This document shows positions 2,784 to 60,520 of a stretch of 64,000 nucleotides of DNA, one piece after another. Source of the stretch: Octopus sinensis (taxonomy: Eukaryota); assembly GCF_006345805.1 (NCBI RefSeq), contig NC_043018.1, positions 16,740,001 through 16,804,000 of the forward strand, in the 5' to 3' direction. A program made the translations under genes and the position numbers. The notes below the pieces were generated by a model that was given only the letters and a program-made list of their open reading frames with translations, searched no databases and was not told the origin of the DNA. Position 1 is the first letter of the stretch. Every line of letters starts with the position of its first letter.

Positions 2784-3769
2784 TATATATATATATGCGT
2801 GTCTGTGTGTGTGTGTGAAGAAAAAAGAAGTCCTAAGGATTTCATGCTTTTATTTCATAAAGCATGAAATAAAGAACTATTTATCTTGGGCTTTTGTCCC
2901 TTTGAAGGATTCAACATTATTCATGATGAATCCCTGAAGGGGATTAAAGCACCTAAATAAACAATTTTTATATAAATCCTGGCTATCTCCTTTTACATAA
3001 TATATAAAATCTGTAAACCACTTCAAACAATCCATACACACACATGTATGTATGCATGCATGCATGTACAGACAGACATGGATACATATGTATGTGTGTA
3101 GGCATGTATGCATGCATGCATGCATGTATGTATGTACGCAGAGCTATACACATGTACAAAAGAAAAAGAAAGAAAGAAAGACTGAGTGAGGAAAAATAAT
3201 TGGCTTCTGGAAAACTCAATGAGAAGGTTCTTATTAGGGACCCATTGACCCTAAATTGAGTTGGATCAGGTCTGATAGACAAACAACAGCCAGTCATCAA
3301 ATGCCACAAATTGGATTCCTTTATTACAACCAGAAATGCTTTTATCCTAACAACAAAGGCAAGGCAAAGCAGCATCCATGACACATTATATAACAGGAGA
3401 GTTTCTAGAGAACAGAAAGACCAGATGGATTGTATCAGATTGAAAATGGCAAAACGAAGAACGCAAGAACTGTAGAGTACAGAGTCGCTGAGCATCCAGT
3501 GATTACGAGACATAGGAATATAGTTTTCAAATATACAGTGTGAATATTACAAAATTAAATTAATTTGATCGGTAATGGATACATTAGTATTAATGATGAT
3601 TAATAAAATTAATAACAATAATTATGGTAATAACAGTAATGAAATCACATTCATATTAATAATAATAATAACTGATTGCAATTAAACATACAGGAATACA
3701 ACAGCTGAATAACAATGGTTCTTTAGAATTTATTGATGTTTCTATGCGTGTAGTTGTGTGTATGAATGT

Positions 3770-4665
3770 GTGTGTGTGTGTGTGTACATGCATGGATGTC
3801 TATGTGTGTGCATATCTACAAATGTGTGGAAAACCTAAAAAATACACATACACATATCTATGCATGCATATATATATATATATATATAAATACACTAACA
3901 CACTTATATATGCAAGCATATATATATATATATATGCATACATATATATATATATATATATATACATATACATATCTATACATACATATACATATATATA
4001 TACATACATATACATATATATATACATACATATATACATATATATACATACATATACATATTATACATACATATACTATATAATACATATACATATATAT
4101 AATACATATATATATATATATATATACATACATATACATATATATACATACATATATATATATACATATATATACATATATATATACATATATATATACA
4201 TACATATATATATATACACATATATATATATAAACATATATATATAAACATATATATATCTATACACATATATATATAAACATATATATATCTATACACA
4301 TATATATATACATATATGCAAATATATATATATGTATATATATATATATGTATATATATACACATACATACATATATAAATGTAGATTACATATATAATA
4401 TATATACACACATATATATATATATACACATATATATATATAAACATATATATATAAACATATATATATCTATACACATATATATATAAACATATATATA
4501 TCTATACACATATATATATACATATATGCAAATATATATATATGTATATATATATATATGTATATATATACACATACATACATATATATATATTATATAT
4601 ATATATATATACATATACATATCTATACATACATATATATACATATATATGTATATATAGAAGCA
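3770..4665. repeat. Long (TA)/(TACA) compound microsatellite
   Basis: Direct reading; internal ~210-216-bp higher-order repeats. Confidence 0.95.
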
Positions 4666-4709
4666 GTAAGAGAGAGGCAAACATCTACTGTCACACACAC
4701 ACACATATA

Positions 4710-4872
4710 TTTTCCTTGTTTCAGTCGATGGCCATGTTAGAGCACTGCCTAAAAGAATTTAGTCAGATAAATTCATCCCTAGTACTTATATTCTTTTGGG
4801 TAAACTGCCAAATCATGGGGATGTAAACACACCAACACCAGTTGTCATGCAGTTGTGGTGGAGAAACACAGA
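4710..4872 (-). mobile_element. SINE family B 3' half, diverged
   Basis: GTTTCAGTC..GGCCATG..GTAAACACACCAACACC. Confidence 0.55.
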
Positions 4873-5402
4873 CTCAAAGATGCATACAGAATGTACAAAT
4901 ATATATATACATACATACATATATATACACAACTTATAAACAATGGCAGAAGAAAATTATTTCTATGCCAATATGCTAATAACAGGCTTCTAAATTGTCA
5001 ATTTCCACATATTATATACCCACTACAGTAATACGTATATATGAAGATTCATACATATATAAATATAAAGATATATGTATACATATATTCATATATATAT
5101 ATACATACTTATATATAAACACATACATATATATACACATACATATATATACACATACATATAAATACACATACATATATATATATACACACACACATAT
5201 GATTTTGATTTTTCCAGTTTCAGCTAATGAGCTGTGGCCATGCTGGGGCACCGCCATTTACAGAAATATATCTATACACATATATATATGTATACATATA
5301 TATATATATACATATATATACATATATATACATATATACACAAACATATATATATATACATATATACTTATATATAGATATACATATACATATATATATA
5401 AT

Positions 5403-5560
5403 AGGAATTTACAAAAAAACAAAAGACTAAGACAGGTGTGTAAACAACAAACAGGTGTATTAGTTTAATGCTCGGGAAGGTGAGAAAGTGTTTCATGTTT
5501 CGAGCCTAAGCTCTTCAACAGAATTGAACGCAAGAAAATAAACAGAGAGAGAATAAAATA
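5403..5560 (-). mobile_element. Diverged relative of family H in (TA)n
   Basis: Shares ACAAAC..TGTATTAG and GTTTCGAGCCT-A-GCTCTTC-ACAG with family H; TA tracts on both sides. Confidence 0.5.
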
Positions 5561-5561
5561 C

Positions 5562-5597
<36 letters not shown>

Positions 5598-6204
5598 ATA
5601 CATAGACATATATACACACACATGTATATATATGCAGATATATATACACATATATATACATACACACATATATATATGGATATATATACATATATATGTA
5701 TGTATATATATACATATATATATATATACACATTTATATATATATACATGTATATAGATATACATACATGTGTGTATATATATATATAAGATATATATAT
5801 ATATATATATATAAGATATATATATCTATACATATATTTATATATATATTTACATACATGCATATATATATGTACATATACGTATAAATATATGTATATG
5901 CATATATATATATGTATATATACGTATATATATATATATGTACATATATATTTGTTTCACAAACACATTCCCTGCTGTGTGACACCTTGAGCAAGTGTCT
6001 TTAATTATATGTATATACATACATATATATATATTTTGTATATTATATTAATTAGTTTTATTTTTATGTTTTAGTTTATGTTTTTCGCTGTTTGATTTGC
6101 CTAATGGTTGTTTCATCTATAATTTAATCTATATATATATATATGTATACATACATATATATATATATATATATACACATACATACATATATATATGTAT
6201 GTAT

Positions 6205-7957: not shown

Positions 7958-8484
7958 ACAAGTCTTGCTCCATTAGACCAGCACTAGTCTCTTTTGAGTC
8001 TAGTTTACTCACACACACACAGGTGTGTGTGTATATGTAGACAAGTATATTGCCCAGCATTCTTGTGTGAACATTCAGCTAAAATATTTGGGCTTCTTTT
8101 TGCATATCGCTGTTTATCCTCCTTTTATGCTGGCTCCTGATGGATCAGATATATCTTTGAGGTGAGGATTTGGCACCAGGGCCCAAAACACATGCAGCTC
8201 CTGCAACCTATACCATCCAAACCCTTCAAAATTTCATAAAAAAAACAGCTAATGACTAAGGCTTCAACTAAGGATTTCAAAGAATGAGGAACAATGTTGG
8301 CTGCTGTGTGGTTAGAATTGAGGACCCTCACAGGTGGAGCATACACCACAAGGCATGCTATCCTGTATTCCAATCACTCTAGCAATGCAATAACATTCTC
8401 TCTTAATCTCTTCAGGCATGTAAAGATAGATATATATGTGTGTGTGTGTATATACGTATATACACAAACACACACACACATATA

Positions 8485-8612
8485 TGGCGGGTGTTAAGAA
8501 GGGCATCCAGCTGTAAAAGTCTACCTAAAACACACACAGTATTCTGGGGTAGTCTTCTACCTGGCTCACTCCTGTCAAACTGTCCAACCTATGCATGGAA
8601 GATCGATGTTAA

Positions 8613-8614
<2 letters not shown>
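8485..8614 (+). mobile_element. Family D 3' fragment
   Basis: AAGAAGGGCATCCAGCTGTAAAA..GTCCAACC-ATGCATGGAA..GTTAAAC. Confidence 0.55.
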
Positions 8615-8647
<33 letters not shown>

Positions 8648-8858
8648 CATATATATATACAAATATATATACGTATATACACATATATATATATATATAC
8701 ATATACATATACGTATATACACATATATATATATATACATATACACATATATACATATATATATACACATATATATACACATACATATGCACATACATAC
8801 ATACATATATATACACATACATATGCACATACATACATACATATACACATACATATGC

Positions 8859-8889
<31 letters not shown>

Positions 8890-8977
8890 TATATACATAC
8901 ATATACACAGACACACACACACATATATATATATACATATATTTATACATATATACATACACACACTCACACATTTG

Positions 8978-9156
8978 TCATCATTATTTAAAGTTCGTTG
9001 TCCATACTGGCATGAGTTTGTCTGCGTTAGCATGCCAGAAGGATGCACCACACTCCAGTTTGATCTGGCATGGTTATCTATGGCTGGATGCCTTTCCTAA
9101 TGCTGACCACTCGGAGACTGTAATAAATGCTTTTAACTGCCATTTGCATGACACCA
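8978..9156 (-). mobile_element. Family D fragment
   Basis: GCTGGATGCCTTTCCTAATGCTGACCAC. Confidence 0.5.
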
Positions 9157-9331
9157 GGCACATACACACACCTATACATATATATGTGTATATATGTACA
9201 TATAAATATGTGTGTATATATATATATATACATATGTATTGTATATATGTATGTATATATGTGTGTGTGTATATCTATGTACATACATATATGTATACAT
9301 GCCTGTATGTATACATATATGTATGTTTGTG

Positions 9332-9362
<31 letters not shown>

Positions 9363-9520
9363 TTCAGTATATATACAGATATATATGTCTATGTGTATAT
9401 ATATATATATGCCTATATATGTATATATATATATACATATTTATATATGTATACACATATGTATATATATATATATATATACACACATATATGTTGGTAT
9501 ATATATATATATATATATAT

Positions 9521-9668
9521 AGGTAAACAGTAAAAATAATTACAGACATGGACAAGAACATGAAACACCACAGAGACGACACAAGAACCACAGGACGGGA
9601 CATTCGAAGCCCTCAGTCATCAGTCAAGAACCAGATCATCTTAGCAATTTCGGCTGATTAATCTTGAT
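9521..9668. mobile_element. Short non-repetitive insert in (TA)n, probable PLE-type fragment
   Basis: Complex sequence with TA-rich tracts on both sides; no complete ribozyme visible. Confidence 0.35.
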
Positions 9669-16010: not shown

Positions 16011-17129
16011 TCACTTCGTCTGTTCCGTGTACTGTTTATAAAGTTCGCTATTTCTTTTCATGATATCCAAACACGACCCTAACAACCGTTCAAAAGAGTC
16101 TCTTTGTAAAAATGCCACCTGTATGTCACCAACTGCGTATACGTTGGCTGACCGTGGTTTATTCTCTATAAGTGCCAGTTCTCCGAAATACGATCCCTTG
16201 CACAATCGACCCACCTCCTCCACTTCTCCTTCAGGGTCGTCTGGTTTATGGGAAATGGTGACCCTTATCTCACCCCTTTCCACAAAATACATACCGTCAG
16301 CTCCGTCCCCCTGCTTGATGATCTGGGTTTGGTCTGAGTAGTTTTGCGAGACCAGGGCATCGGCCAAACTCATTCTTTCGTACTGGTCGAGCGATTTCAA
16401 AATGGGTACATTTTCCAGGAATTCCTCGTACATTTTGCGTTTATTGCAGGCTCTTTTCAGAACGATTCGCCGAAATGAATTTCGGTCCATCGCCCATAAC
16501 GTGCCCTCATCCGACACAGCAGTAACGGTCGCCGAACGTGGCTTGTTATACAAAAGTGCTAACTCACCGAAGCTGCCCGTATCTACGAACTGGTGGACTT
16601 TCCTGGTAGTTCCGTTAGTTTCCACAAACACATCGTAAATTCCGCTGTCTATCACATAAAAATTATCTCCATCGTCTCCCTGGGTGATCACTTCTTCCCC
16701 AGCATTCACCTTTTTCCCGAACATCGCATCAAGAACTTCCTGCATTTGGTCAGAATCCAAAGATCGGAATATCAAAATGCCGCTAACGGCTTCTGTCAGA
16801 CGCCGACGTTGTTCGTCCGTTTTCGGGTGGACGACTTTCTCATCATCGTCATCTTCTTCAGGGTCATACTTTTCGCCTGAAATAGAAATCCGACGTTCGT
16901 AACGATTCGAGATGTTCGTTTTAGGCTTCATCGATGAAGGTTCTGGTTCTCCAGCTTCGCACTCATCCACCACGATGTACATGGGGACCGTTTTAGGTTT
17001 CCGATTTTCTCGCACCCTCGTGAAATAGTCTATTGCGAAGTCGTAGATGTCAGCCGGCCTCTCTCGTAGAACTGCTACAGTGAAATCTCTCAACATATCA
17101 CCAAGACCCTCCGGGATTTCAAAGCTCAT
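16011..17129 (-). CDS. PRKAR2: cAMP-dependent protein kinase (PKA) type II regulatory subunit, single exon, 372 aa
   Basis: RIIa-type dimerisation/docking domain (FEIPEGLGDMLRDFTVAVLRERPADIYDFAIDYF). Substrate-type inhibitor site RRIS (Ser82). Two cNMP-binding domains with phosphate-binding cassettes FGELALLYNKPRSAT and YFGELALIENKPRSAN. RII-like C-terminus FERLLGSCLDIMKRN. Uninterrupted ATG-to-TGA ORF. The symbol denotes the RII class, not 1:1 orthology. Confidence 0.95.
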   Translation of the reverse strand: MSFEIPEGLGDMLRDFTVAVLRERPADIYDFAIDYFTRVRENRKPKTVPMYIVVDECEAGEPEPSSMKPKTNISNRYERRISISGEKYDPEEDDDDEKVVHPKTDEQRRRLTEAVSGILIFRSLDSDQMQEVLDAMFGKKVNAGEEVITQGDDGDNFYVIDSGIYDVFVETNGTTRKVHQFVDTGSFGELALLYNKPRSATVTAVSDEGTLWAMDRNSFRRIVLKRACNKRKMYEEFLENVPILKSLDQYERMSLADALVSQNYSDQTQIIKQGDGADGMYFVERGEIRVTISHKPDDPEGEVEEVGRLCKGSYFGELALIENKPRSANVYAVGDIQVAFLQRDSFERLLGSCLDIMKRNSELYKQYTEQTK

Positions 17130-21607: not shown

Positions 21608-21764
21608 ATTAACTGACGTGTCTTTTCTTTCCTTTTCTTTTTCTTTTTTTTTCTTTTCAACCCAGTGAGATAGTAGGATGTCGTTTCAAGAAGATTCGGC
21701 TATTGTTTCTAGCAGGTCGGACGACCATGTAGCACTCCCCTCAGTTGGCTCATGAAACTTCCTG

Positions 21765-21894
21765 GTAGTGGTAGTAGTAGTAGTAGTAGTAGTAATGGTA
21801 GTAGTAGTAGTAATAGTAGTAGTAGTAGTAATAGTAATAGTAGTAGTAGTAATGGTAGTAGTAGTAATTGTAGTAGTAATAGTAGTAGTAGTAA

Positions 21895-21929
<35 letters not shown>

Positions 21930-21960
21930 TAGTAGTTGTAGTAGTAGTAATTGTAGTGGT
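21765..21960. repeat. (TAG)n microsatellite
   Basis: Direct reading. Confidence 0.95.
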
Positions 21961-22480
21961 GGTGGTAATTTTCTTATGCGTGACGCCTCACAGTTTGCTG
22001 GCAAAATGCGTAACGAGAACAACAACAGCAAGAACAATAATCCATTTTTCTGTAGACAGAAAGGCCTGGAACTTTCGAGAGAGTGGGTGGTGAGTAGTTT
22101 TGCATCGACGCCGCCTAGGGGCCCAAAGTCGACTTTGGCGGAATTTGAACGTTTGAACGTTTTACCCCTTACGTGCAAAATACAAAAACGATTCTGCCAG
22201 CACCCCCCCCCCAACCCGCCCTAAAGAAAAAAAAAACAAAAAAGAAACATAAAAAAAAATAACACAAATAAACGGTTTGTTAGTATGTTCAATGTCCAAT
22301 GTACCCCACCACCGCCGCCGCCGCCGCCACCGCCACACCAACTAGCGCTGCTGTTATATGTATTGCCCTGTTGCTAATACGAAAAGCGCTGAAGGCGGCA
22401 GCAGCGGCCACAACGCTTACTCGTTTGTCATGTTTAACGCTTTGAATTTGTAGGGAAGACTGGCAACGTGCATATATCGT

Positions 22481-33720: not shown

Positions 33721-33747
33721 GACTCACTTTACTTTTGTGTGTGTGTG

Positions 33748-33801
<54 letters not shown>

Positions 33802-33921
33802 ATATGTATGTATGTATGTATATATATGTATATAATGTCTAATAAACACACACACGCACTCACATCTGTAATAGAAGAAAATCTGTTATAGGCTCCCGGA
33901 AATTCTTCTATTTTCCTATAC

Positions 33922-33928
33922 CAGCAGC

Positions 33929-34005
<77 letters not shown>

Positions 34006-34065
34006 AAGTTGCAGTTGTCGTAGTAGATGATACAGAAGTAGAAGAAGAAGAAGAAGAAGAAGAAG

Positions 34066-34095
<30 letters not shown>
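33922..34095. repeat. Compound (CAG)n(TAG)n(GAA)n microsatellite
   Basis: Direct reading. Confidence 0.95.
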
Positions 34096-34097
<2 letters not shown>

Positions 34098-34443
34098 GAA
34101 AAAATGCGAAGGAAGAATGAAAAGAGGAAGAGGAAGGAGAGGAGGAGGAGGTGGGATGTATAAAAATGTTTGTGTGAGTTGCTTCATCAGTTGCTGCTGG
34201 TGTTGTTAGACTTTAAAAAAAAAGACGGTTTTATTGTATGTGTGAGAGTATTTAAGGTATTTCCTACATTTCAGAATTAGGAGCAGCCCATCATTTCTCT
34301 TCTCCTCAATTATAATGAGCATTCGCCTCCAACCCCACCTCCAATCCAACGCATATCTGGTGGTCCCACTCACACACCCCATGTCATTCTTAACTTGTCT
34401 GCACTCCAAACTCAAGTACAGACTGGAATTTTTGAATAACTTA

Positions 34444-34531
34444 CGTTATTATTACAATTATTATTATTACTATTATTATTATTACTATTATTATTATTAT
34501 TATTATTATTATTGTTATTATTATTATTATA

Positions 34532-34584
<53 letters not shown>

Positions 34585-34613
34585 CATTATTATTATTATC
34601 ATTATTATTATTA

Positions 34614-34668
<55 letters not shown>
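34444..34668. repeat. (ATT)n microsatellite
   Basis: Direct reading. Confidence 0.95.
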
Positions 34669-34846
34669 GTTTTTTCCTTCTTTCTTCAAATTTTCTTCCG
34701 TTTCTCGCCGAGAGTTTTCCATACACCTAGGGCAGAGAAGCACATTGTATGCATTCCCAGATTACAGACGCAAACTCACAGATAAAATATGTATTTAAAA
34801 ATTAATAAATAAATAAATTCATGGATGGATGTTGTTTTCACAGTGA

Positions 34847-39596: not shown

Positions 39597-41262
39597 CTAT
39601 GTTTGACTTTTGCTTTATGTTTGTACAAGTTGGCTCCAAGTCTCACCCAGAGACCTCAAGAGACAACAGGTTGGAAGTTCTGTGCCATATATTTGAAGTT
39701 TTTTTTTTTTTTTGGTGTTGTACTAGTGAATGTCTAATACATAAAATAAGATTTAAAAGAATTTAAAAAAAGAAAAAAAAATGTTTGTTTTAAACCTTGG
39801 GATTACATAGAGAGTATTTTGCGTAGGATATGAGCAGTTCTCATGAACACTATCTTTTGAATTTCTGCCATTTTGGGGTTTCCTGGTATCTGAGTTAGGT
39901 AGCAATCAGTCCCTTTCGCTATCATTCCCAGCGCACCTATGACAACAGGTATTGTTTTAGTCTTCAGCTTCCACATTTTGCTGATTTCTATTTCAAGATC
40001 TTTATATTTGCTCAGTTTTTGGTAGGTCTTGACAGATACGTTTACATCGATTGGGACAGTCATATCAATGAGGAGGCATGTTCTTTGTCTGAAGTCTTTC
40101 AATATGATGTCTGGCCTATTTGCATCTATCTTCCTGTCAGTTTGAATGGTGAAGTTCCAGAGGAGTGAGATGTGGTCATTTTCAAGCACTGGAGGTGGAT
40201 TGTGTTCCACCAGTTTTTTTCATGGGGCAAATCCAGGTTTTTGCAAATTACCCAGTGAATATATTGTGCAGCTCTATCATGCCTATTGAGGTACTCTGTA
40301 GGCGCTAGAAGACTGCATTTGGAGACAACATGGTCAATGGTTTCATTTTGTTGTCGGCATACACGACATGTTGGGCTACTGCCGTTCTTTAATATGTTGG
40401 CCTGGTAGTTTCTTGTTGGTAGGCATTGATCTTGAGCTGCTATGATAAACCCCTCTGTTTCAGATTTTAAGCCAGAGGCCATTAGCCATTGATGTGTCAG
40501 GGCTTTGTCAATATCTGCATTATTCGCTCTCTTTGGGTATTTGCCATAGAGAGGTTTTTCTTGCCATTTATCATTCAGAATATCTAAGGCCGCAGTTTTG
40601 GCACGGGTTTTCATGCGCCTAGCTTTTTCTGTGCTTGTTTCTTGTATGTCTATCTCTAATTCCGAAATTGGTTGTATTCGGAATTCACTTAGATATTCCT
40701 TTGCCTGTTTTGTGACTGAGTATGATGCTTTCTTGCTTTCATGTTTTGAGACAAGTTTTAACATCCAGTCCTCAGAGTTTTTCAGGTAGGTGTCTAGGCC
40801 AATTGTAGCAATCTTCATTGTTATTGCCAGTTGCAAAAGACCACGGCCTCCCTCTTTTCTTGGCAGGTAGAGTCGTTCTGTATCTGCCTTAGGGTGGTGC
40901 ATTCTATGCATTGTCAACAGTTTCCTTATTTTTCTGTCGAGCTGACATATTTCAGTAATTGACCAGTTAACAATATTGAAACTGTAAGTCACGACTGGTA
41001 TGGCTAATGCATTGATCGCTTCGATCCTGTTTCTCGCATTCAGCTCTGTCTTGAGTATTGCTCTCACTCTTCGATAGCATTCTCTCCTGATCCTTTCCTT
41101 CATCTCTGAATGCCTTATTCCGTTCCCTTCAATTACCCCTAGGTACTTGTAGTTCTCCGCTGGGTCTAGTTCTTTTATGACATTCTGCTGGTCAAGGTTA
41201 ACGTTAGATGTTTCTGTCATTTTTCCTTTGATAAAGGTAGCTTTTGCACATTTATCGAGGCC
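39597..41262 (-). mobile_element. 5'-truncated R4/Dong-clade LINE (RT C-terminus, CCHC, restriction-like endonuclease), family Dong-A
   Basis: GLDKC..YKYLG, RLYLPRKEGGRGL, CRVC..ETIDHVVSKC, RHD, RPDIIL..IDMTVP..KLSKYKDL, IPVVIGALG. One frameshift near 40210. (ATT)n on both sides. Confidence 0.9.
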
Positions 41263-47424: not shown

Positions 47425-48366
47425 TTAAATTAGATTTTAAAAGGTCTTCCATGCAGGTGGTGCCCCCTAATTCTTCATTTGGTCTTCAATGTTCGAGGAA
47501 GTGAAATAGATTGAAAGCTCTCTACTCGGCACTAGAAAGAGCAGAAAATCTCCCTCGAGATGGACAGAATGGAAAATGAAGGAAACGATTTTTCAAAAAC
47601 TATGTGATGATCACGATTGGAACGCATTTGACCAATAGTCTGCTCGATAAGAACTTAGGTTCTCCGCAACACCAAAAATGACGACCGGTACAACAAAAAC
47701 AACAACAAAACAAAAGAAAACGACAGTTGCGGGTATGGCGGGGTGGGGGGGGTGAGGTATTGGTTAACAATATATGTTTGGTAGTTTTAGGCAATTTGTC
47801 AGCAAATATCAGGAAGTCGGGATCCTTGCGGAAGGAAAAATGACTTAGAAAAGAAAGAATGCAATGATAAAAGCTTTTATATTTATTTCTTGAACAAAGA
47901 ACTATTTAGCTAAACTTACCATTGGACCCATTCATATAACTTCTGTCGGCGCCAAGAAGGAAGTCTCTAAGTGGAACCTTGTCTTGCTATATATAGAGAG
48001 TCAAATATCTTGTAAATTACAAACTCGTGTCTTACAAAACAACTATTCGACAATGCGGTCCCTGATATACAAAACTAAAGAAGAAAATATGGTGAAGCAG
48101 CTTTGGTAGTAATCTAGTGGGTTTTAGGAGTCATCTGGAGTTACAGATTTGCTATATTCTGTTCGCTTCTACTAAATGTTTCCAGTGGAAATTTCTATTT
48201 TGAATTTTTGAATCCACGTTGAATTTTATGAGGGTAGGCCACTGAGACCACTACGATGAGAGAAGACAATTACGACCGCTACAGAAAATACAGACCTCAT
48301 TGCGAATTACACTAAAGAAAGACCAGAAATTGGTGTCCAGTAAGAGAGGCCAGTAAATCAAAGACA

Positions 48367-48961
48367 GTGAAGAGAGGCCACTGTGTTGTGAAGAGAGGCG
48401 ACTGTGTTGTGAAGAGAGGCCACTGTGTTGTGAAGAGAGGCCACTGTGTTGTGAAGAGAGGCCACTGTGTTGTGAAGAGAAGCCACTGTGTTGTGAAGAG
48501 AGGCCACTGTGTTGTGAAGAGAGGCCACTGTGTTGTGAAGAGAGGCCACTGTGTTGTGAAGAGAAGCCACTGTGTTGTGAAGAGAGGCCACTGTGTTGTG
48601 AAGAGAGGCCACTGTGTTGTGAAGAGAGGCCACTGTGTTGTGAAGAGAAGCCACTGTGTTGTGAAGAGAGGCCACTGTGTTGTGAAGAGAGGCCACTGTG
48701 TTGTGAAGAGAAGCCACTGTGTTGTGAAGAGAGGCCACTGTGTTGTGAAGAGAGGCCACTGTGTTGTGAAGAGAGGCCACTGTGTTGTGAAGAGAAGCCA
48801 CTGTGTTGTGAAGAGAGGCCACTGTGTTGTGAAGAGAGGCCACTGTGTTGTGAAGAGAGGCCTCTGTGTTGTGAAGAGAAGCCACTGTGTTGTGAAGAGA
48901 GGCCACTGTGTTGTGAAGAGAGGCCACTGTGTTGTGAAGAGAGGCCACTGTTGTTGTGAAG
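48367..48961. repeat. 21-bp minisatellite (GTGAAGAGAGGCCACTGTGTT), ~28 units
   Basis: Direct reading; the AGAAGCC variant recurs mostly every 4th unit. Confidence 0.97.
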
Positions 48962-49084
48962 AGAGGCTGGCTGATACGCTACAGAGGATACAATGGCCAG
49001 TACATTAAAGAATTCAGCTATCTTCTCTAATACGATAGATATAGACCAGAGAGTGTGACAGAGTAGGAAGAGTGAACGAGAGAA

Positions 49085-49123
<39 letters not shown>

Positions 49124-49178
49124 AAGAGAGAGCATTGCAAACACTCTCTTATCTGTGTTTGCGAAATCACTTTCACAT

Positions 49179-49278
49179 NNNNNNNNNNNNNNNNNNNNNN
49201 NNNNNNNNNNNNNNNNNNNNNNNNNNNNNNNNNNNNNNNNNNNNNNNNNNNNNNNNNNNNNNNNNNNNNNNNNNNNNN
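49179..49278. other. Assembly gap (100 N)
   Basis: Run of exactly 100 N, typical of a scaffolding gap of unknown size. Confidence 0.99.
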
Positions 49279-49445
49279 GAAATATTTTTTCTCTGCCGCT
49301 TTTCTTTTTATTCTCCGATTTTCTTTCAATTCTTTCTGTCAAAGAGCGTATGTTCGAAACGCAAAAGACGTGTCCATTCTTCCCGAGTGTCAAACTAATA
49401 CACCTGCTTGTTGTTCTTACACCTGTCTTCGTCTTTTGTTTTCTG
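49279..49445 (+). mobile_element. Diverged relative of family H, starting at the gap edge
   Basis: TCTTT-CTGTCAA-A-GAGC-GTAT-GTTC-GAAAC-GC-A-AAAGA at 49331-49368; runs into (TA)n. Confidence 0.5.
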
Positions 49446-56845: not shown

Positions 56846-57837
56846 CTAATTATATATATATACATATCTAAGTCTTTCAATATCCATCCATCTACTAATC
56901 CATCCATTCATAATTCCTTCCCTCCTTCTTTGATCGATTTCTTCCTTCCATCAATCCATCCATCCACCTACACTTCACCGGATATCCACACATAAATCCA
57001 TATATCTGTATAAAAACCTATATGTTTATTGATGAATATAAGTAACCATTCTTTCCCTCCTTCAACTTCCTTCAACAATACTCCTCAGCCTCTCACCCTC
57101 AATCTAAGTCTCTCTCTCTCATTAAACCCAGTCCCTCGTCTCTACAAAAGCCCTCTTCTTGCTCATCACTTCCGCATTCGTTCTTACAATGTCATGCGTT
57201 TCTCTTCGTTTCGTCCAACTTACACCATTCTTAAATTCATTAAACACTCATCTCTTCTCAGTCCTTCATTCTCTGTCAGTCTGTCTCTCTCTCCCCCTCT
57301 TCACACTTTATCACACAATTAACCCAGAGAGCAAAGACAACAACCAAACCAACAAACACAAACTTAAACGCCACACAACAAAACAAAAAAGCACAACGAC
57401 ATAAAAACAAACAAACAAACAAATAAACACGTAAAATATTTAAAACAAACACTGAAGTAATTTCATTTATTCTGGATTTGATTCAACAAAGTTATCCCCC
57501 CCTCCCCGCTTCTATTTTTCCTTACTGAAAGGCGGCGGCAGATGGCGCTTGTTGCTGATTGTATTTCTGATTATATTCAATTGAAAAAACAATTCAACCA
57601 CTCTTCTCTCATGATTAACCTATTTGTCGTTTGTTTCACTCGACCTACATGGCATACGGTAATTTTGTCAAAAAATGATTTTAATTTCCACCATGTGTTT
57701 TATTATTTGCCTGAGGTTGACAGGGGAGGAGGTGAAGAGAAGAATACCGGTTGCTTTTATGTTACATAAACGTATGTGTATGTGTATATTCATGTATATA
57801 TACGTGTGTGCATGCAGTTGTGTGTGTGTGTGTGTGA

Positions 57838-58310
<473 letters not shown>

Positions 58311-60520
58311 GTTATCTCCTCTTTTATATACACTTGTTGTATATACAATATATCTGATAAAAAATCCTCTTCTCGTGCATAAAATATCCTTAACAATATG
58401 TTCGATGGTTCAAAGCTTACCAGTGGCTAAACAATAACAACAACAAAAATATCTCCAACTGCAACCGTTATTTACAATTGCTGATTGGTCCCATGGTGGC
58501 GAGAAGGCTCTCCCCACCACGTCTCACCTTTGATCTAGTGGAACAACTGGAATGTTAGAAAAAGAGAACTTCGTCAGTCCTGGGCTGCTGCTTTCCTCAT
58601 CAAGCACGAAAGGATGGAAAATAAAAACAAAGTTTACCTCGGTGGGATTTGAACTCAGATCGCGGGGAGCGAAAATGCGGTAATGCATTTTATATGACAT
58701 TGTAATGACTCTGCCAATCGTACTCTAAGACATTTCGCTGCTTACTTCGAAGTCCGCCTAAAATTACGCAGGTAGTTAAATACTTTTATTTCTGTTCGGT
58801 AAACTGATAAATGTCTCCTGAGAGAGATCAACGACTTCAATCAAATAAACGACTTTCATTAGTTTAATTATAATTAATGACTTTGGTGGAGGCAGGATGG
58901 CGGATGCTCGATGGAGTCTGTATTGACCAGTTTGTGTTTGTGTCAACTGAAATATCTCTTCATTATATCTCTTCATACAAACGTTCAAAATAAACACTAA
59001 TGGTTGCTTGAGCACATCAAAAATGCCATACCACCGTATATGGAATTAATAGATTTATTTTAGATGTACAAATGAAAAATTTGTTTCATTTAGTCGTATT
59101 TTAATTCAGAAAATATTTTTTATTTTGAAAATAAATTACTGTTCATTATTTTGTTTGCACAAGCGTAATAAAATTTGAGAAATGTCAAAATGTAATTTTT
59201 GTACCTGTGTAACGGTTATCTGTGTACAATGCATTACTGATCACAGTCCAGCTAACAAAAGTTCAACGGTGCCGAGTTATATTAAACGTTAGGAAACGGA
59301 ATTAAAAACCAAACAGAACAACTCACAAGATTCAAAATGCTCACCATTGGGTTTTCTGGGGAAATATAAAAGAAAAATACTTGATGCATTTAATGTACGA
59401 AACAAGGAGTAACCTAGTGAAGGAAGAACGTTTCTGTTTAAAATAGCTGCTAAAATCTCTGTTGGGTTAACATATCGCCTTATAGTAAGGCGATGTGTTA
59501 GTTGAATTCATAAAAATAACACAGGATGACCCAAAATGTGCTTGGATCGGTATATCTTGCAGCTAAGCCACAATATCAAAAAACAAAAGAACAGGTAAGG
59601 GAGTGTTGTTAAAAACCCTGTTTCTCAGCCAAGTGGTTCAGGGTTTCATGGAAACCATCTTGCGTTATTTGTTCAGCCCGAGTTGCACAAACATCCTGGC
59701 TTTTTTGCCCATCAGAAATACAATAAATGAGCAATTGGCTTTTGGAAAACCTACAGCCAACGCTATTACTGCTTATTTACAATGATGTAAATAAATCAGC
59801 ACATCAAATCCGATACTATGCCATCCATACATGAATAAAGCCATTACAATAATAATTATAGATTTGATAGTAATGAAGTAGTTGCTAAGATGTTTAAATA
59901 TCTGTATTAATATTGCTCATTGGTGGTTGCTTGGTCACGTTAAAAATGTCACGCCACCTTCTGTGCAATGACTCAATATGTTCTATTCATAATTAATTAG
60001 GAGTAAAGCAATACATATTTATGAGGCTAGCACGAAGTTTGATTACTGAGCAAGGAAAGGAGGTCAGTGTTTCATCATGCGATTAATCACAGTCAGGATT
60101 AGGGACGTTAGACGGAAATTTATTGTCGTGTTGTTTGATAGACTCAGTTGTTGGTATCAGTTTGAATTATTTCAACGTTCGAAAATATACTGAAATGAAT
60201 TTGAAATTCTATGAGTTATTTCTTTTCTCTCTCTCCCTCCTTCTCTCCTTCCCTCCCTCAATTTGTCTGTCTGTCTGTCTGCTTCTCTCTCTCCCCCTCT
60301 CCTGTTTCTCTCAGTTTTAATAGTTTTTTTTCTTTCTTATCGCACTTGCCCCGGGATGAATAACTCCGTTTTCTCTCTAGCCACGCACTCACAAACACTC
60401 ACGTACTCTTGTATGTGGGGGTTTTGTGTGCGTTGTGTGTGTGTGTGTTGTGTGTGTGTGCGTATGTGTTGTGAGTGTGCGCGTGTGTTGTGTGTGTGCA
60501 TGTGCATCAGTGTATACACA

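What the first reader, a model, noticed from the sequence alone, without database searches (positions are those of the whole stretch)
16149..16535. PKA RII with PKG-like serine in both phosphate-binding cassettes
Seen: PBC-A is KPRSAT (Ser199, codon 16533-16535) and PBC-B is KPRSAN (Ser327, codon 16149-16151), with different codons (TCG, TCA). Established: PKA R subunits typically have PRAA here, whereas PKG and CNG channels have Thr/Ser that contacts the 2-amino group of cGMP. Ala-to-Thr swaps in mammalian RI raise cGMP affinity. Inference: a cGMP-sensitised or dual-specificity PKA holoenzyme, anchored through an RII-type D/D domain.
Basis: partly seen in the sequence, partly recalled or inferred. 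Interest (0 to 1): 0.7.

Follow-up and report, generated by a model that had tools for sequence, protein, structure and literature searches.

The report
Ancient intronless PKA RII paralogue, serine cassettes
The octopus gene is one member of an old, single-exon duplicate of the PKA type II regulatory subunit, shared by molluscs, annelids and a nemertean, that always carries a PKG-like hydroxyl residue in both cyclic-nucleotide pockets; it may therefore be a natural PKA that also listens to cGMP, but this has not been measured.

Summary
Window 16011..17129 (-) is one uninterrupted 372-aa ORF. It encodes an RII-type PKA regulatory subunit with a D/D domain, an RRIS inhibitor site and two CNB domains. 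The cassettes read KPRSAT (Ser199, TCG) and KPRSAN (Ser327, TCA).

It is not an octopus peculiarity. All 89 orthologue clusters from molluscs, annelids and a nemertean have Ser in cassette A and Ser or Thr in cassette B. All 115 canonical RII clusters have Ala/Ala, including one from Octopus sinensis and ones from the same bivalves, chiton, annelid and nemertean.

The Ser-type gene has a single coding exon in all six species whose genomic locus I examined. The canonical gene spans 70-122 kb with at least 11 coding exons. This points to an ancient retrogene-like paralogue under strong purifying selection (pN 0.046, pS 0.77).

The clade also has His instead of Gly at the beta5 position of CNB-A. 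That is the second position that engineers mutate to make RIalpha accept cGMP. Two residues on the AKAP-docking face are changed as well.

Relaxed cAMP/cGMP discrimination is a reasonable inference but untested. I found no paper describing this paralogue.

The parts
16011..17129 (-). Complete single-exon CDS (372 codons plus TGA at 16011..16013) of the Ser-type RII paralogue
   Evidence: ORF list and sequence. Pfam RIIa plus 2x cNMP_binding. PDB RIIbeta E=2.6e-109. 91% identical to the Argonauta hians protein, and in the same 90% cluster as O. bimaculoides XP_052831656. pN=0.046 and pS=0.77 against Argonauta.
17001..17108 (-). RIIa dimerisation/docking domain (residues 8-43). Clade-specific Gly10 (17100..17102) and Arg14 (17088..17090) replace canonical Thr10 and Gln14
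   Evidence: Pfam PF02197, residues 8-43. AF2 helices 9-23 and 28-42. G10 in 78/89 against T in 109/115; R14 in 84/89 against Q in 105/115. RIIalpha Thr10 and Gln14 lie on the AKAP-binding face (PMC11367651).
16884..16895 (-). Inhibitor / autophosphorylation site RRIS (residues 79-82), RII-type with a phosphorylatable Ser
   Evidence: R79, R80 and S82 are invariant in 89/89 Ser-type and 115/115 canonical proteins. The segment lies in the low-confidence linker 43-86.
16455..16832 (-). CNB-A domain (about residues 100-225)
   Evidence: Pfam cNMP_binding, 2 stretches. Aligns to RIIbeta and RIIalpha. AF2 beta-barrel and P-helix 189-194.
16593..16595 (-). His179 (CAC) on beta5 of CNB-A, 20 residues before Ser199. 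It is equivalent to RIalpha Thr190 (bovine) / Thr192 (human) and to PKG Ibeta Cys173 ('site 3')
   Evidence: H in 72/89 (Y 9, F 6) of the Ser-type clade against G in 113/115 canonical RII. The alignment to RIIbeta is ungapped over this stretch. PKG site-3 description in PMC3080414. T192R is the partner mutation of A212T in PMC4565163.
16527..16568 (-). Phosphate-binding cassette A, GELALLYNKPRSAT, with Ser199 (TCG, 16533..16535)
   Evidence: S in 89/89 against A in 115/115.
16032..16454 (-). CNB-B domain (about residues 226-366)
   Evidence: Pfam best stretch 262-350. AF2 barrel and P-helix 317-322.
16143..16184 (-). Phosphate-binding cassette B, GELALIENKPRSAN, with Ser327 (TCA, 16149..16151) and clade-specific Glu322 (16164..16166)
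   Evidence: Position 327 is S 71 / T 18 against A 115/115. Position 322 is E 78/89 against T 115/115.
16101..16103 (-). Arg343 (AGA) at the start of the CNB-B alphaB helix. It is clade-specific and changes together with Glu322
   Evidence: R in 84/89 against V in 108/115. Exceptions often occur in pairs, for example Patella_b with N322/T343. A salt bridge between the two is inference only.

Best explanation
The ORF is the octopus orthologue of a distinct, ancient paralogue of the PKA type II regulatory subunit, which I call 'RII-S'.

Origin (shown for the data, inferred for the mechanism): RII-S arose by retroposition, or by complete intron loss, of an RII gene no later than the common ancestor of molluscs, annelids and nemerteans. 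It has since been kept as a single coding exon alongside the multi-exon canonical RII.

Basic function (inferred from sequence): it retains everything needed to act as a PKA regulatory subunit. These are the D/D dimerisation domain, the RRxS inhibitor/substrate site that plugs the catalytic subunit, and two CNB domains with the Gly-Glu...Arg residues that hold the ribose and cyclic phosphate. It therefore most likely forms an R2C2 holoenzyme that a cyclic nucleotide releases.

What differs (shown): the base-recognition side of both pockets and the docking face. Every member has Ser in cassette A and Ser or Thr in cassette B, where all canonical R subunits have Ala. CNB-A also carries His (or Tyr/Phe) instead of Gly at the beta5 position facing the purine.

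Consequence (inferred, untested): by analogy with PKG Thr193/Thr317 and with engineered RIalpha, the hydroxyl can hydrogen-bond the 2-amino group of syn-cGMP and the equatorial phosphate oxygen. The holoenzyme should then discriminate much less between cAMP and cGMP than canonical RII. It would be a dual-input PKA rather than a fully cGMP-selective one, because CNB-B lacks the PKG beta5 Arg.

Anchoring (inferred): the conserved Gly10 and Arg14 on the docking face suggest a partner set different from that of canonical RII.
For: Identity and integrity.

Conservation of the motif: 89/89 against 0/115.

Clade structure: the clade is separate, with 80% NJ bootstrap for mollusc + annelid + nemertean. 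Its synapomorphies are G10, R14, V167, H179, F181, S199, E322, S/T327, F340, R343 and S/C345. These are absent from the rotifer, nematomorph, bug and fluke proteins that carry a Ser or Thr.

Coexisting canonical gene: a canonical PRAA/PRAA RII occurs in Octopus sinensis (P0220, 50% identical), Aplysia, chiton, Owenia, Lineus and bivalves.

Gene structure: the CDS is a single exon in the six genomic loci, from octopus, Argonauta, oyster, chiton, nemertean and annelid; a decapodiform Logan contig also carries an uninterrupted ORF. The canonical gene spans 70 kb with at least 11 coding exons in Owenia and 122 kb in Mercenaria.

Selection: pN=0.046 and pS=0.77. Ser codons drift at the third base. 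Within-clade identity is 67%, the same as for canonical lophotrochozoan RII.

Literature on mechanism: the PKG Thr193 hydroxyl bonds the 2-NH2 and OP1 of cGMP, and T193S costs only 4-fold (PMC3080414). Single mutants of RIalpha CNB-B lose selectivity, and the double mutant prefers cGMP (PMC3765617). T192R/A212T or G316R/A336T give holoenzymes activated equally by both nucleotides, and all four changes give a cGMP-selective enzyme (PMC4565163).
Against: There is no binding or activation measurement for any member of the clade.

Ser is a weaker cGMP determinant than Thr.

PKG Ibeta CNB-A, which has Thr, prefers cGMP only two-fold (PMC3080414). A hydroxyl alone therefore does not make a cGMP sensor.

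CNB-B position 307 (equivalent to PKG Arg297 and RIalpha Gly316) is Gly/Ala/Ser in the clade, not Arg.

His at beta5 has never been tested as a guanine contact.

The retrogene origin is inferred from intron absence only. No poly(A) tract or target-site duplication was seen, and none would be expected after more than 500 million years.

The NJ tree cannot say whether the duplication predates Lophotrochozoa.
Confidence: 0.5

Rival explanations
1. RII-S is still a cAMP-selective regulatory subunit. The Ser/Thr hydroxyl mainly bonds the equatorial phosphate oxygen and, together with H179, E322 and R343, tunes cAMP affinity, off-rate or domain cooperativity. The paralogue's real specialisation would then be where and when it is expressed and what it docks to (Gly10/Arg14).
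For: In PKG, the Thr193 hydroxyl also bonds OP1 of the phosphate, and PKG CNB-A with Thr binds cAMP nearly as well as cGMP (PMC3080414). CNB-B lacks the beta5 Arg. Docking-face changes are as diagnostic of the clade as the cassette changes.
Against: Every engineered or natural case examined in the literature read here links a hydroxyl at this position to better cGMP binding. Two independent domains fixed the same change and have held it for hundreds of millions of years. In CNB-A the second known selectivity position changed too.
Confidence: 0.35
2. The pockets are tuned to another ligand, such as cIMP, cXMP or a pyrimidine cyclic nucleotide, rather than to cGMP.
For: CNB domains can shift ligand class: trypanosomatid PKA binds nucleosides (PMC10959531). 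PKA R subunits bind cCMP (PMC3392273, title and abstract only).
Against: The Glu and Arg that hold the ribose 2'-OH and the cyclic phosphate are invariant, so the ligand is a 3',5'-cyclic nucleotide. Nothing in the sequence points specifically to a non-cAMP, non-cGMP base.
Confidence: 0.07
3. The serines are a cephalopod- or octopus-specific adaptive substitution in the ordinary RII gene. This is the implicit reading of the first stage.
For: None beyond the window sequence itself.
Against: The same residues occur in 89 clusters from chiton, bivalves, gastropods, cephalopods, annelids and a nemertean. The ordinary RII gene exists separately in Octopus (P0220).
Confidence: 0.01
4. It is a processed pseudogene, or a recently inserted retrocopy with no function.
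For: The CDS is intronless and sits in microsatellite-rich, gene-poor sequence.
Against: The frame is intact in seven species. pN/pS is about 0.06 with saturated synonymous sites. Only the CDS is conserved between octopus and Argonauta. Orthologues span three phyla.
Confidence: 0.01

Closest known systems
Canonical PKA type II regulatory subunit (vertebrate RIIalpha/RIIbeta; invertebrate RII such as the cloned Aplysia 'PKA type II regulatory subunit', P0168)
   Same: Same architecture: RIIa D/D domain, RRxS inhibitor site, two CNB domains. 50-56% identity. The cassette Gly, Glu and Arg are invariant. The best sequence and fold matches are RIIbeta and RIIalpha.
   Different: Ser, and Ser/Thr, replace Ala in both cassettes. 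His replaces Gly at CNB-A beta5. Glu322 and Arg343 replace Thr and Val in CNB-B. Gly10 and Arg14 replace Thr and Gln on the docking face. The CDS is a single exon rather than at least 11 coding exons. It forms a separate clade that coexists with canonical RII in the same genomes.
cGMP-dependent protein kinase (PKG I) CNB-A and CNB-B
   Same: A hydroxyl residue immediately after the cassette Arg. This is the residue that bonds the 2-NH2 of syn-cGMP (PMC3080414).
   Different: There is no fused kinase domain and no leucine zipper. The residue is Ser rather than Thr in most members. CNB-B lacks the beta5 Arg (Gly307 in the window protein). Sequence similarity to PKG is much lower (E about 1e-41 against 1e-109 for RII).
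Engineered RIalpha mutants T192R/A212T and G316R/A336T (Lorenz, Herberg, Kim and colleagues); earlier Ala-to-Thr mutants of Shabb and Corbin
   Same: The same two positions per domain are involved. In CNB-A of the natural protein both are changed (His179, Ser199), and in CNB-B the cassette position is changed (Ser/Thr327).
   Different: The natural residues are His and Ser, not Arg and Thr. The CNB-B beta5 position is unchanged. These are natural proteins conserved across phyla, not laboratory constructs, and their ligand preference is unmeasured.
Trypanosomatid PKA regulatory subunit (nucleoside-activated)
   Same: It is another natural PKA R subunit that departs from the consensus cassette at this very position (Val instead of Ala; PMC6440977, PMC10959531).
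   Different: Trypanosomatid R has also lost the cassette Arg and Glu and no longer binds cyclic nucleotides. RII-S keeps both.

Membership tests
PKA type II regulatory subunit (RII) | N-terminal RIIa-type dimerisation/docking domain | tested here: met
   Pfam PF02197 E=5.9e-10, residues 8-43. Two helices at 9-23 and 28-42 in the AF2 model.
PKA type II regulatory subunit (RII) | Inhibitor site RRxS with a phosphorylatable Ser (RI has RRxA/G) | tested here: met
   R79-R80-I81-S82. R, R and S are invariant in 89/89 clade members.
PKA type II regulatory subunit (RII) | Two tandem CNB domains with cassette Gly-Glu...Arg | tested here: met
   Pfam cNMP_binding, two stretches, E=5.5e-38. G188/E189/R198 and G316/E317/R326 are invariant.
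PKA type II regulatory subunit (RII) | Consensus cassette of cAMP-dependent PKAs: Ala directly after the Arg (PRAA) | tested here: not met
   Ser199 and Ser327. Canonical RII has Ala in 115/115 at both positions. The Ala is called part of the consensus in PMC10959531.
PKA type II regulatory subunit (RII) | Orthology to the multi-exon RII gene shared by cnidarians and bilaterians | tested here: not met
   Separate clade with 80% NJ bootstrap. A canonical orthologue exists in Octopus sinensis (P0220). Single coding exon against at least 11 coding exons. It is a paralogue within the RII family.
PKA type II regulatory subunit (RII) | Binds and inhibits the PKA catalytic subunit; released by cAMP | not testable with these tools
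   Needs protein biochemistry.
PKA type II regulatory subunit (RII) | AKAP docking through the conserved D/D surface (Ile3/Ile5, Thr10, Gln14, Arg22 and others) | tested here: inconclusive
   Ile5, Leu9, Leu13, Thr17, Val18, Leu21 and Arg22 are kept. Thr10 is replaced by Gly and Gln14 by Arg throughout the clade. The roles of Thr10 and Gln14 are taken from PMC11367651.
cGMP-dependent protein kinase (PKG) | Ser/Thr kinase domain fused C-terminal to the CNB domains | tested here: not met
   The ORF ends at residue 372, after CNB-B. There is no Pkinase hit.
cGMP-dependent protein kinase (PKG) | Hydroxyl residue (Thr) after the cassette Arg in both CNB domains | tested here: met
   Ser199 and Ser327 here. 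Across the clade the residues are Ser at A and Ser/Thr at B. The residue is Ser rather than Thr in the window protein.
cGMP-dependent protein kinase (PKG) | beta5 Arg (PKG Ibeta Arg297) in CNB-B that reads the guanine | tested here: not met
   The position 20 residues before Ser327 is Gly307. Across the clade it is G 46, A 23, S 11.
Processed retrogene | Intron-free coding sequence while the parental gene family has introns | tested here: met
   Gene range equals CDS length in octopus, Argonauta, oyster, chiton, Lineus and Owenia. Owenia canonical RII has at least 11 coding exons over 70 kb.
Processed retrogene | Poly(A) remnant and target-site duplications | tested here: inconclusive
   No A-tract follows the stop codon, where microsatellites begin at once. 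Flanks are not conserved even between octopus and Argonauta. These marks would be erased at this age.

The most novel reading that the evidence does not exclude
Molluscs, annelids and nemerteans possess a naturally dual-input (cAMP and cGMP) type II PKA. An ancient retrogene-derived R subunit has re-tuned both nucleotide pockets (Ser/Thr in the cassettes, His on beta5) and its docking surface. NO/cGMP signals could then switch on a separately anchored pool of PKA catalytic subunit. This would be the first metazoan PKA regulatory subunit that is not cAMP-selective.
Probability: 0.3. Interest if true: 0.8.

Novelty: new variant of a known kind. Interest (0 to 1): 0.6.

Why it matters
PKA is treated as synonymous with 'cAMP-dependent protein kinase', and the only accepted natural exception is the nucleoside-activated kinase of trypanosomatids.

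Which residues decide cAMP-versus-cGMP selectivity is still debated, and has been studied mainly by mutating mammalian RIalpha and PKG. Here evolution has made the same substitutions in both domains and kept them without exception in the 89 protein clusters sampled from three phyla, next to an unchanged paralogue that serves as a built-in control.

If the prediction holds, cGMP and cAMP pathways converge on PKA in the very animals used as models of synaptic plasticity and of sperm activation (Aplysia, Lymnaea, octopus, mussels, oysters). Published 'RII' biochemistry in these species, such as mussel Rmyt2, would then need assigning to one paralogue or the other. If it does not hold, the clade shows that a hydroxyl at this position is compatible with cAMP selectivity, which is informative too.

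The single-exon gene is easy to clone and express.

Tried and rejected
1. Octopus-private change: rejected by the homologue survey.

2. Pseudogene: rejected by pN/pS and the intact frames.

3. Wider distribution. The exhaustive representative search was dominated by multi-CNB giant proteins. It did turn up Ser- or Thr-bearing R-like proteins in a rotifer, a nematomorph, a bed bug and a fluke. These lack the clade's other synapomorphies and do not join it in the tree, so I treat them as convergent.

4. Rooting and dating. The NJ tree gives no usable support for the position of the clade relative to canonical RII. Mean identities are nearly the same to lophotrochozoan, deuterostome and arthropod RII. 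No maximum-likelihood program was available.

5. Expression evidence. Logan contigs of the decapodiform orthologue end in microsatellites on both sides. They cannot be told apart as RNA or DNA.

6. Flank conservation and regulatory elements. Only the CDS plus about 12 nt upstream and about 85 nt downstream aligns between octopus and Argonauta.

7. Literature. No paper in the library describes this paralogue. Lorenz 2017 (PMC5896744) and Huang 2014 (PMC4019043) are not held, so single-mutant numbers come only from the two meeting abstracts. My memory that mussel PKA isoforms were reported to be activated by cGMP and cIMP (Bardales et al. 2004) could not be checked and is not used.

8. Glu322-Arg343 salt bridge. 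The structure tool returns no coordinates, so the distance could not be measured.
Full report
**What is in the window**

The minus strand of window 16011..17129 carries one uninterrupted ORF of 372 codons. Pfam finds an RIIa dimerisation/docking domain (residues 8-43, E=5.9e-10) and two cNMP_binding domains (E=5.5e-38). The closest solved proteins are RIIbeta (6wjf, E=2.6e-109) and RIIalpha (3j4q, E=2.8e-107). RIalpha follows at about 1e-69 and PKG at about 1e-41.

An AlphaFold model (mean pLDDT 75.9) shows two D/D helices, a disordered linker holding the inhibitor site, and two CNB barrels. Its best Foldseek matches are RIIalpha and RIIbeta holoenzyme chains.

The inhibitor site is R79-R80-I81-S82, the RII type. 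Cassette A is GELALLYNKPRSAT with Ser199 = TCG at 16533..16535. Cassette B is GELALIENKPRSAN with Ser327 = TCA at 16149..16151.

**Whose genome and which gene**

The protein is 91% identical to an Argonauta hians protein. It sits in the same 90% cluster as Octopus bimaculoides XP_052831656, so the window is octopod DNA. The surroundings are AT-rich and full of microsatellites.

**The serines are a clade character, not an octopus character**

I sorted the full-length hits of two database searches by their cassettes.
- 89 non-redundant clusters have Ser in cassette A (89/89) and Ser (71) or Thr (18) in cassette B.
- 115 clusters have Ala at both positions (115/115).

The named members of the Ser-type set are a chiton, bivalves, gastropods, cephalopods, the annelids Dimorphilus, Paralvinella and Owenia, and the nemertean Lineus. 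The Ala-type set holds the canonical RII of cnidarians, deuterostomes and arthropods.

The Ala-type set also includes the same lophotrochozoans. It contains Octopus sinensis (P0220, PRAAT/PRAAT, 50% identical to the window protein), Liolophura, Patella, Owenia, Lineus, Mytilus, Mercenaria and the cloned Aplysia 'PKA type II regulatory subunit'. So these animals have two RII genes.

A neighbour-joining tree gives 80% bootstrap to the mollusc + annelid + nemertean Ser-type clade.

A profile built from 14 members found no named member from any other phylum. The exhaustive representative search did turn up R-like proteins with Ser or Thr at this position in a rotifer, a nematomorph, a bed bug and a fluke. 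These lack the other diagnostic residues of the clade and do not join it, so I read them as convergent.

**Gene structure**

The Ser-type gene occupies exactly its CDS length in each genome examined:

| Species | Gene length (bp) | Source |
|---|---|---|
| Octopus (window) | 1119 | |
| Argonauta | 1119 | |
| Crassostrea | 1110 | |
| Liolophura (chiton) | 1110 | |
| Lineus (nemertean) | 1086 | |
| Owenia (annelid) | 1092 | |

All of these, and a decapodiform contig, read as single open frames.

The canonical gene of Owenia spans 70 kb, with at least 11 coding pieces found by tblastn. That of Mercenaria spans 122 kb. The simplest reading is that the Ser-type gene began as a retrocopy (or lost all coding introns) before molluscs, annelids and nemerteans diverged. 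No poly(A) tract or target-site duplication is visible, and none would be expected at that age.

**Selection**

Between octopus and Argonauta, synonymous sites are saturated (pS = 0.77) while pN = 0.046. Only the CDS and a few flanking bases align.

Ser codons are always TCN, with a drifting third base. This fits a single GCN-to-TCN step followed by selection on the residue.

Mean identity within the clade (67%) equals that within canonical lophotrochozoan RII (67%). Its identity to lophotrochozoan, deuterostome and arthropod RII is 53-56%. That pattern suggests an early burst of change followed by constraint as tight as on the parent.

**What else distinguishes the clade**

The following positions are conserved within each set and differ between them:

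| Position | Ser-type clade | Canonical RII | Location |
|---|---|---|---|
| 10 | Gly | Thr | D/D docking face |
| 14 | Arg | Gln | D/D docking face |
| 167 | Val | Ile | CNB-A |
| 179 | His (72/89; Tyr 9, Phe 6) | Gly (113/115) | CNB-A beta5 |
| 181 | Phe | Tyr | CNB-A |
| 199 | Ser | Ala | cassette A |
| 322 | Glu | Thr (115/115) | cassette B |
| 327 | Ser/Thr | Ala | cassette B |
| 340 | Phe | Val | CNB-B |
| 343 | Arg | Val | CNB-B alphaB |
| 345 | Ser/Cys | Ala | CNB-B |

Position 179 lies 20 residues before Ser199, in a stretch that aligns to RIIbeta without gaps. It corresponds to bovine RIalpha Thr190 (human Thr192) and to PKG Ibeta Cys173. That is the beta5 'site 3' which faces the purine in PKG (PMC3080414). 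It is also the position mutated together with A212T to make RIalpha CNB-A accept cGMP (PMC4565163).

In CNB-B the equivalent position (307) is Gly/Ala/Ser, not the Arg of PKG.

Thr10 and Gln14 of RIIalpha lie on the AKAP-docking face, and Gln14 hydrogen-bonds AKAP18beta and MAP2c (PMC11367651). Their replacement by Gly and Arg throughout the clade suggests different docking partners. This is inference.

**Mechanism**

The following is shown by sequence: an intact RII-type regulatory subunit whose phosphate- and ribose-binding residues are unchanged, and whose base-facing residues are changed in both pockets.

The following is taken from the literature:
- The Thr193 hydroxyl of PKG bonds the 2-NH2 and the equatorial phosphate oxygen of syn-cGMP.
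- T193S raises the cGMP needed for activation only 4-fold, against 27-29-fold for Ala or Val (PMC3080414).
- Single mutants of RIalpha CNB-B lose cAMP selectivity, and the double mutant prefers cGMP (PMC3765617).
- RIalpha holoenzymes with T192R/A212T or G316R/A336T respond equally to both nucleotides. With all four changes the holoenzyme is cGMP-selective (PMC4565163).
- The Ala is part of the consensus cassette of cAMP-dependent PKAs (PMC10959531).

From these I infer that RII-S holoenzymes discriminate much less between cAMP and cGMP than the canonical paralogue. They are probably dual-responsive rather than cGMP-specific.

There are four cautions.
- PKG CNB-A, which has Thr, prefers cGMP only two-fold.
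- Ser is weaker than Thr as a cGMP determinant.
- CNB-B lacks the beta5 Arg.
- In cells, the CNB-B-only RIalpha mutant did not respond to a cGMP analogue (PMC4565163).

The main rival is that the hydroxyl tunes cAMP affinity or kinetics, and that the paralogue is specialised by expression and anchoring.

**Comparison with what is known, and novelty**

The protein is a member of the RII family by architecture. It fails two tests for being 'the' RII: it lacks the consensus PRAA cassette, and it is not orthologous to the multi-exon RII gene. It is not a PKG, since it has no kinase domain.

Databases label it 'type II regulatory subunit(-like)'. I found no paper that separates it from canonical RII or mentions its cassettes.
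- Recent surveys of metazoan R subunits and AKAPs do not mention it (PMC12608923; PMC12083921).
- Mussel work recognises only Rmyt1 (RI) and Rmyt2 (RII) (PMC13425070).
- A 2024 paper calls trypanosome PKA the first exception to cyclic-nucleotide dependence.

I therefore rate it a new variant of a known kind.

**Verdict**

The inference is chemically well founded and is strengthened by the beta5 His and by deep conservation, but it is untested.
- The change belongs to an old paralogue rather than to octopus.
- Interest 0.6.

Noticed in passing
window 16854..16971 (-), residues 53-92 of the RII-S protein: Nine of the 17 differences from O. bimaculoides fall in this 40-residue linker: V53, C57, I73, Y77, E78, I81, I83, G85 and E92. 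They include the P-2, P-1, P+1 and P+3 positions around the RRxS site. Argonauta, O. bimaculoides and the decapodiforms all read NFSNRAARRHSVSAE here, and Ala85 is in 87/89 of the clade. Several changes need two base substitutions. This could be a lineage-specific burst in the segment that docks into the catalytic cleft, or a local sequence problem.
   Followed up: partly
window 39803..41220 (-): A 364-aa ORF with a weak zf-RVT match (PF13966, E=1e-4, below the Pfam cut-off), plus an overlapping 135-aa ORF. It is probably the decayed tail of a non-LTR retrotransposon ORF2.
   Followed up: partly
window 48367..48967: A 21-bp minisatellite (GTGAAGAGAGGCCACTGTGTT) of 28.6 copies with 97% matches. 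It produces long false ORFs on both strands. An assembly gap (run of N) lies just beyond it, inside ORF 48251..49393.
   Followed up: partly
whole window, e.g. 3744..5863, 8440..9533, 21750..22214, 33729..34785, 57776..58357: Dense (TA)n, (CA)n, (TAT)n and CTAT-type microsatellites produce most of the long 'ORFs' ([18 protein letters not shown]). GC is 0.23-0.41 in the flanks against 0.45-0.48 in the RII-S coding sequence.
   Followed up: no
related proteins P0018/P0061 (Patella), P0019/P0036 (Haliotis), P0084 (Aplysia, 413 aa), P0083 (Elysia crispata, 498 aa): Gastropods carry two or more Ser-type copies, one PRSA/PRTA and one PRSA/PRSA. Heterobranchs have a longer, more divergent extra copy.
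   Followed up: partly
related protein P0074 (Helobdella robusta), and unnamed P0240 and P0261: These proteins have Ala in cassette A and Thr in cassette B. They group weakly (39% bootstrap) with the Ser-type clade and share F340, R343 and S345. This may be a reversion of cassette A in leeches and their relatives.
   Followed up: partly
proteins P0292 (Adineta ricciae), P0327 (Gordionus), P0272 (Cimex lectularius), P0260 (Calicophoron daubneyi): RII-like proteins outside the clade that independently carry Ser or Thr after the cassette Arg, in one or both domains. The position is therefore not absolutely fixed as Ala in other protostomes.
   Followed up: partly
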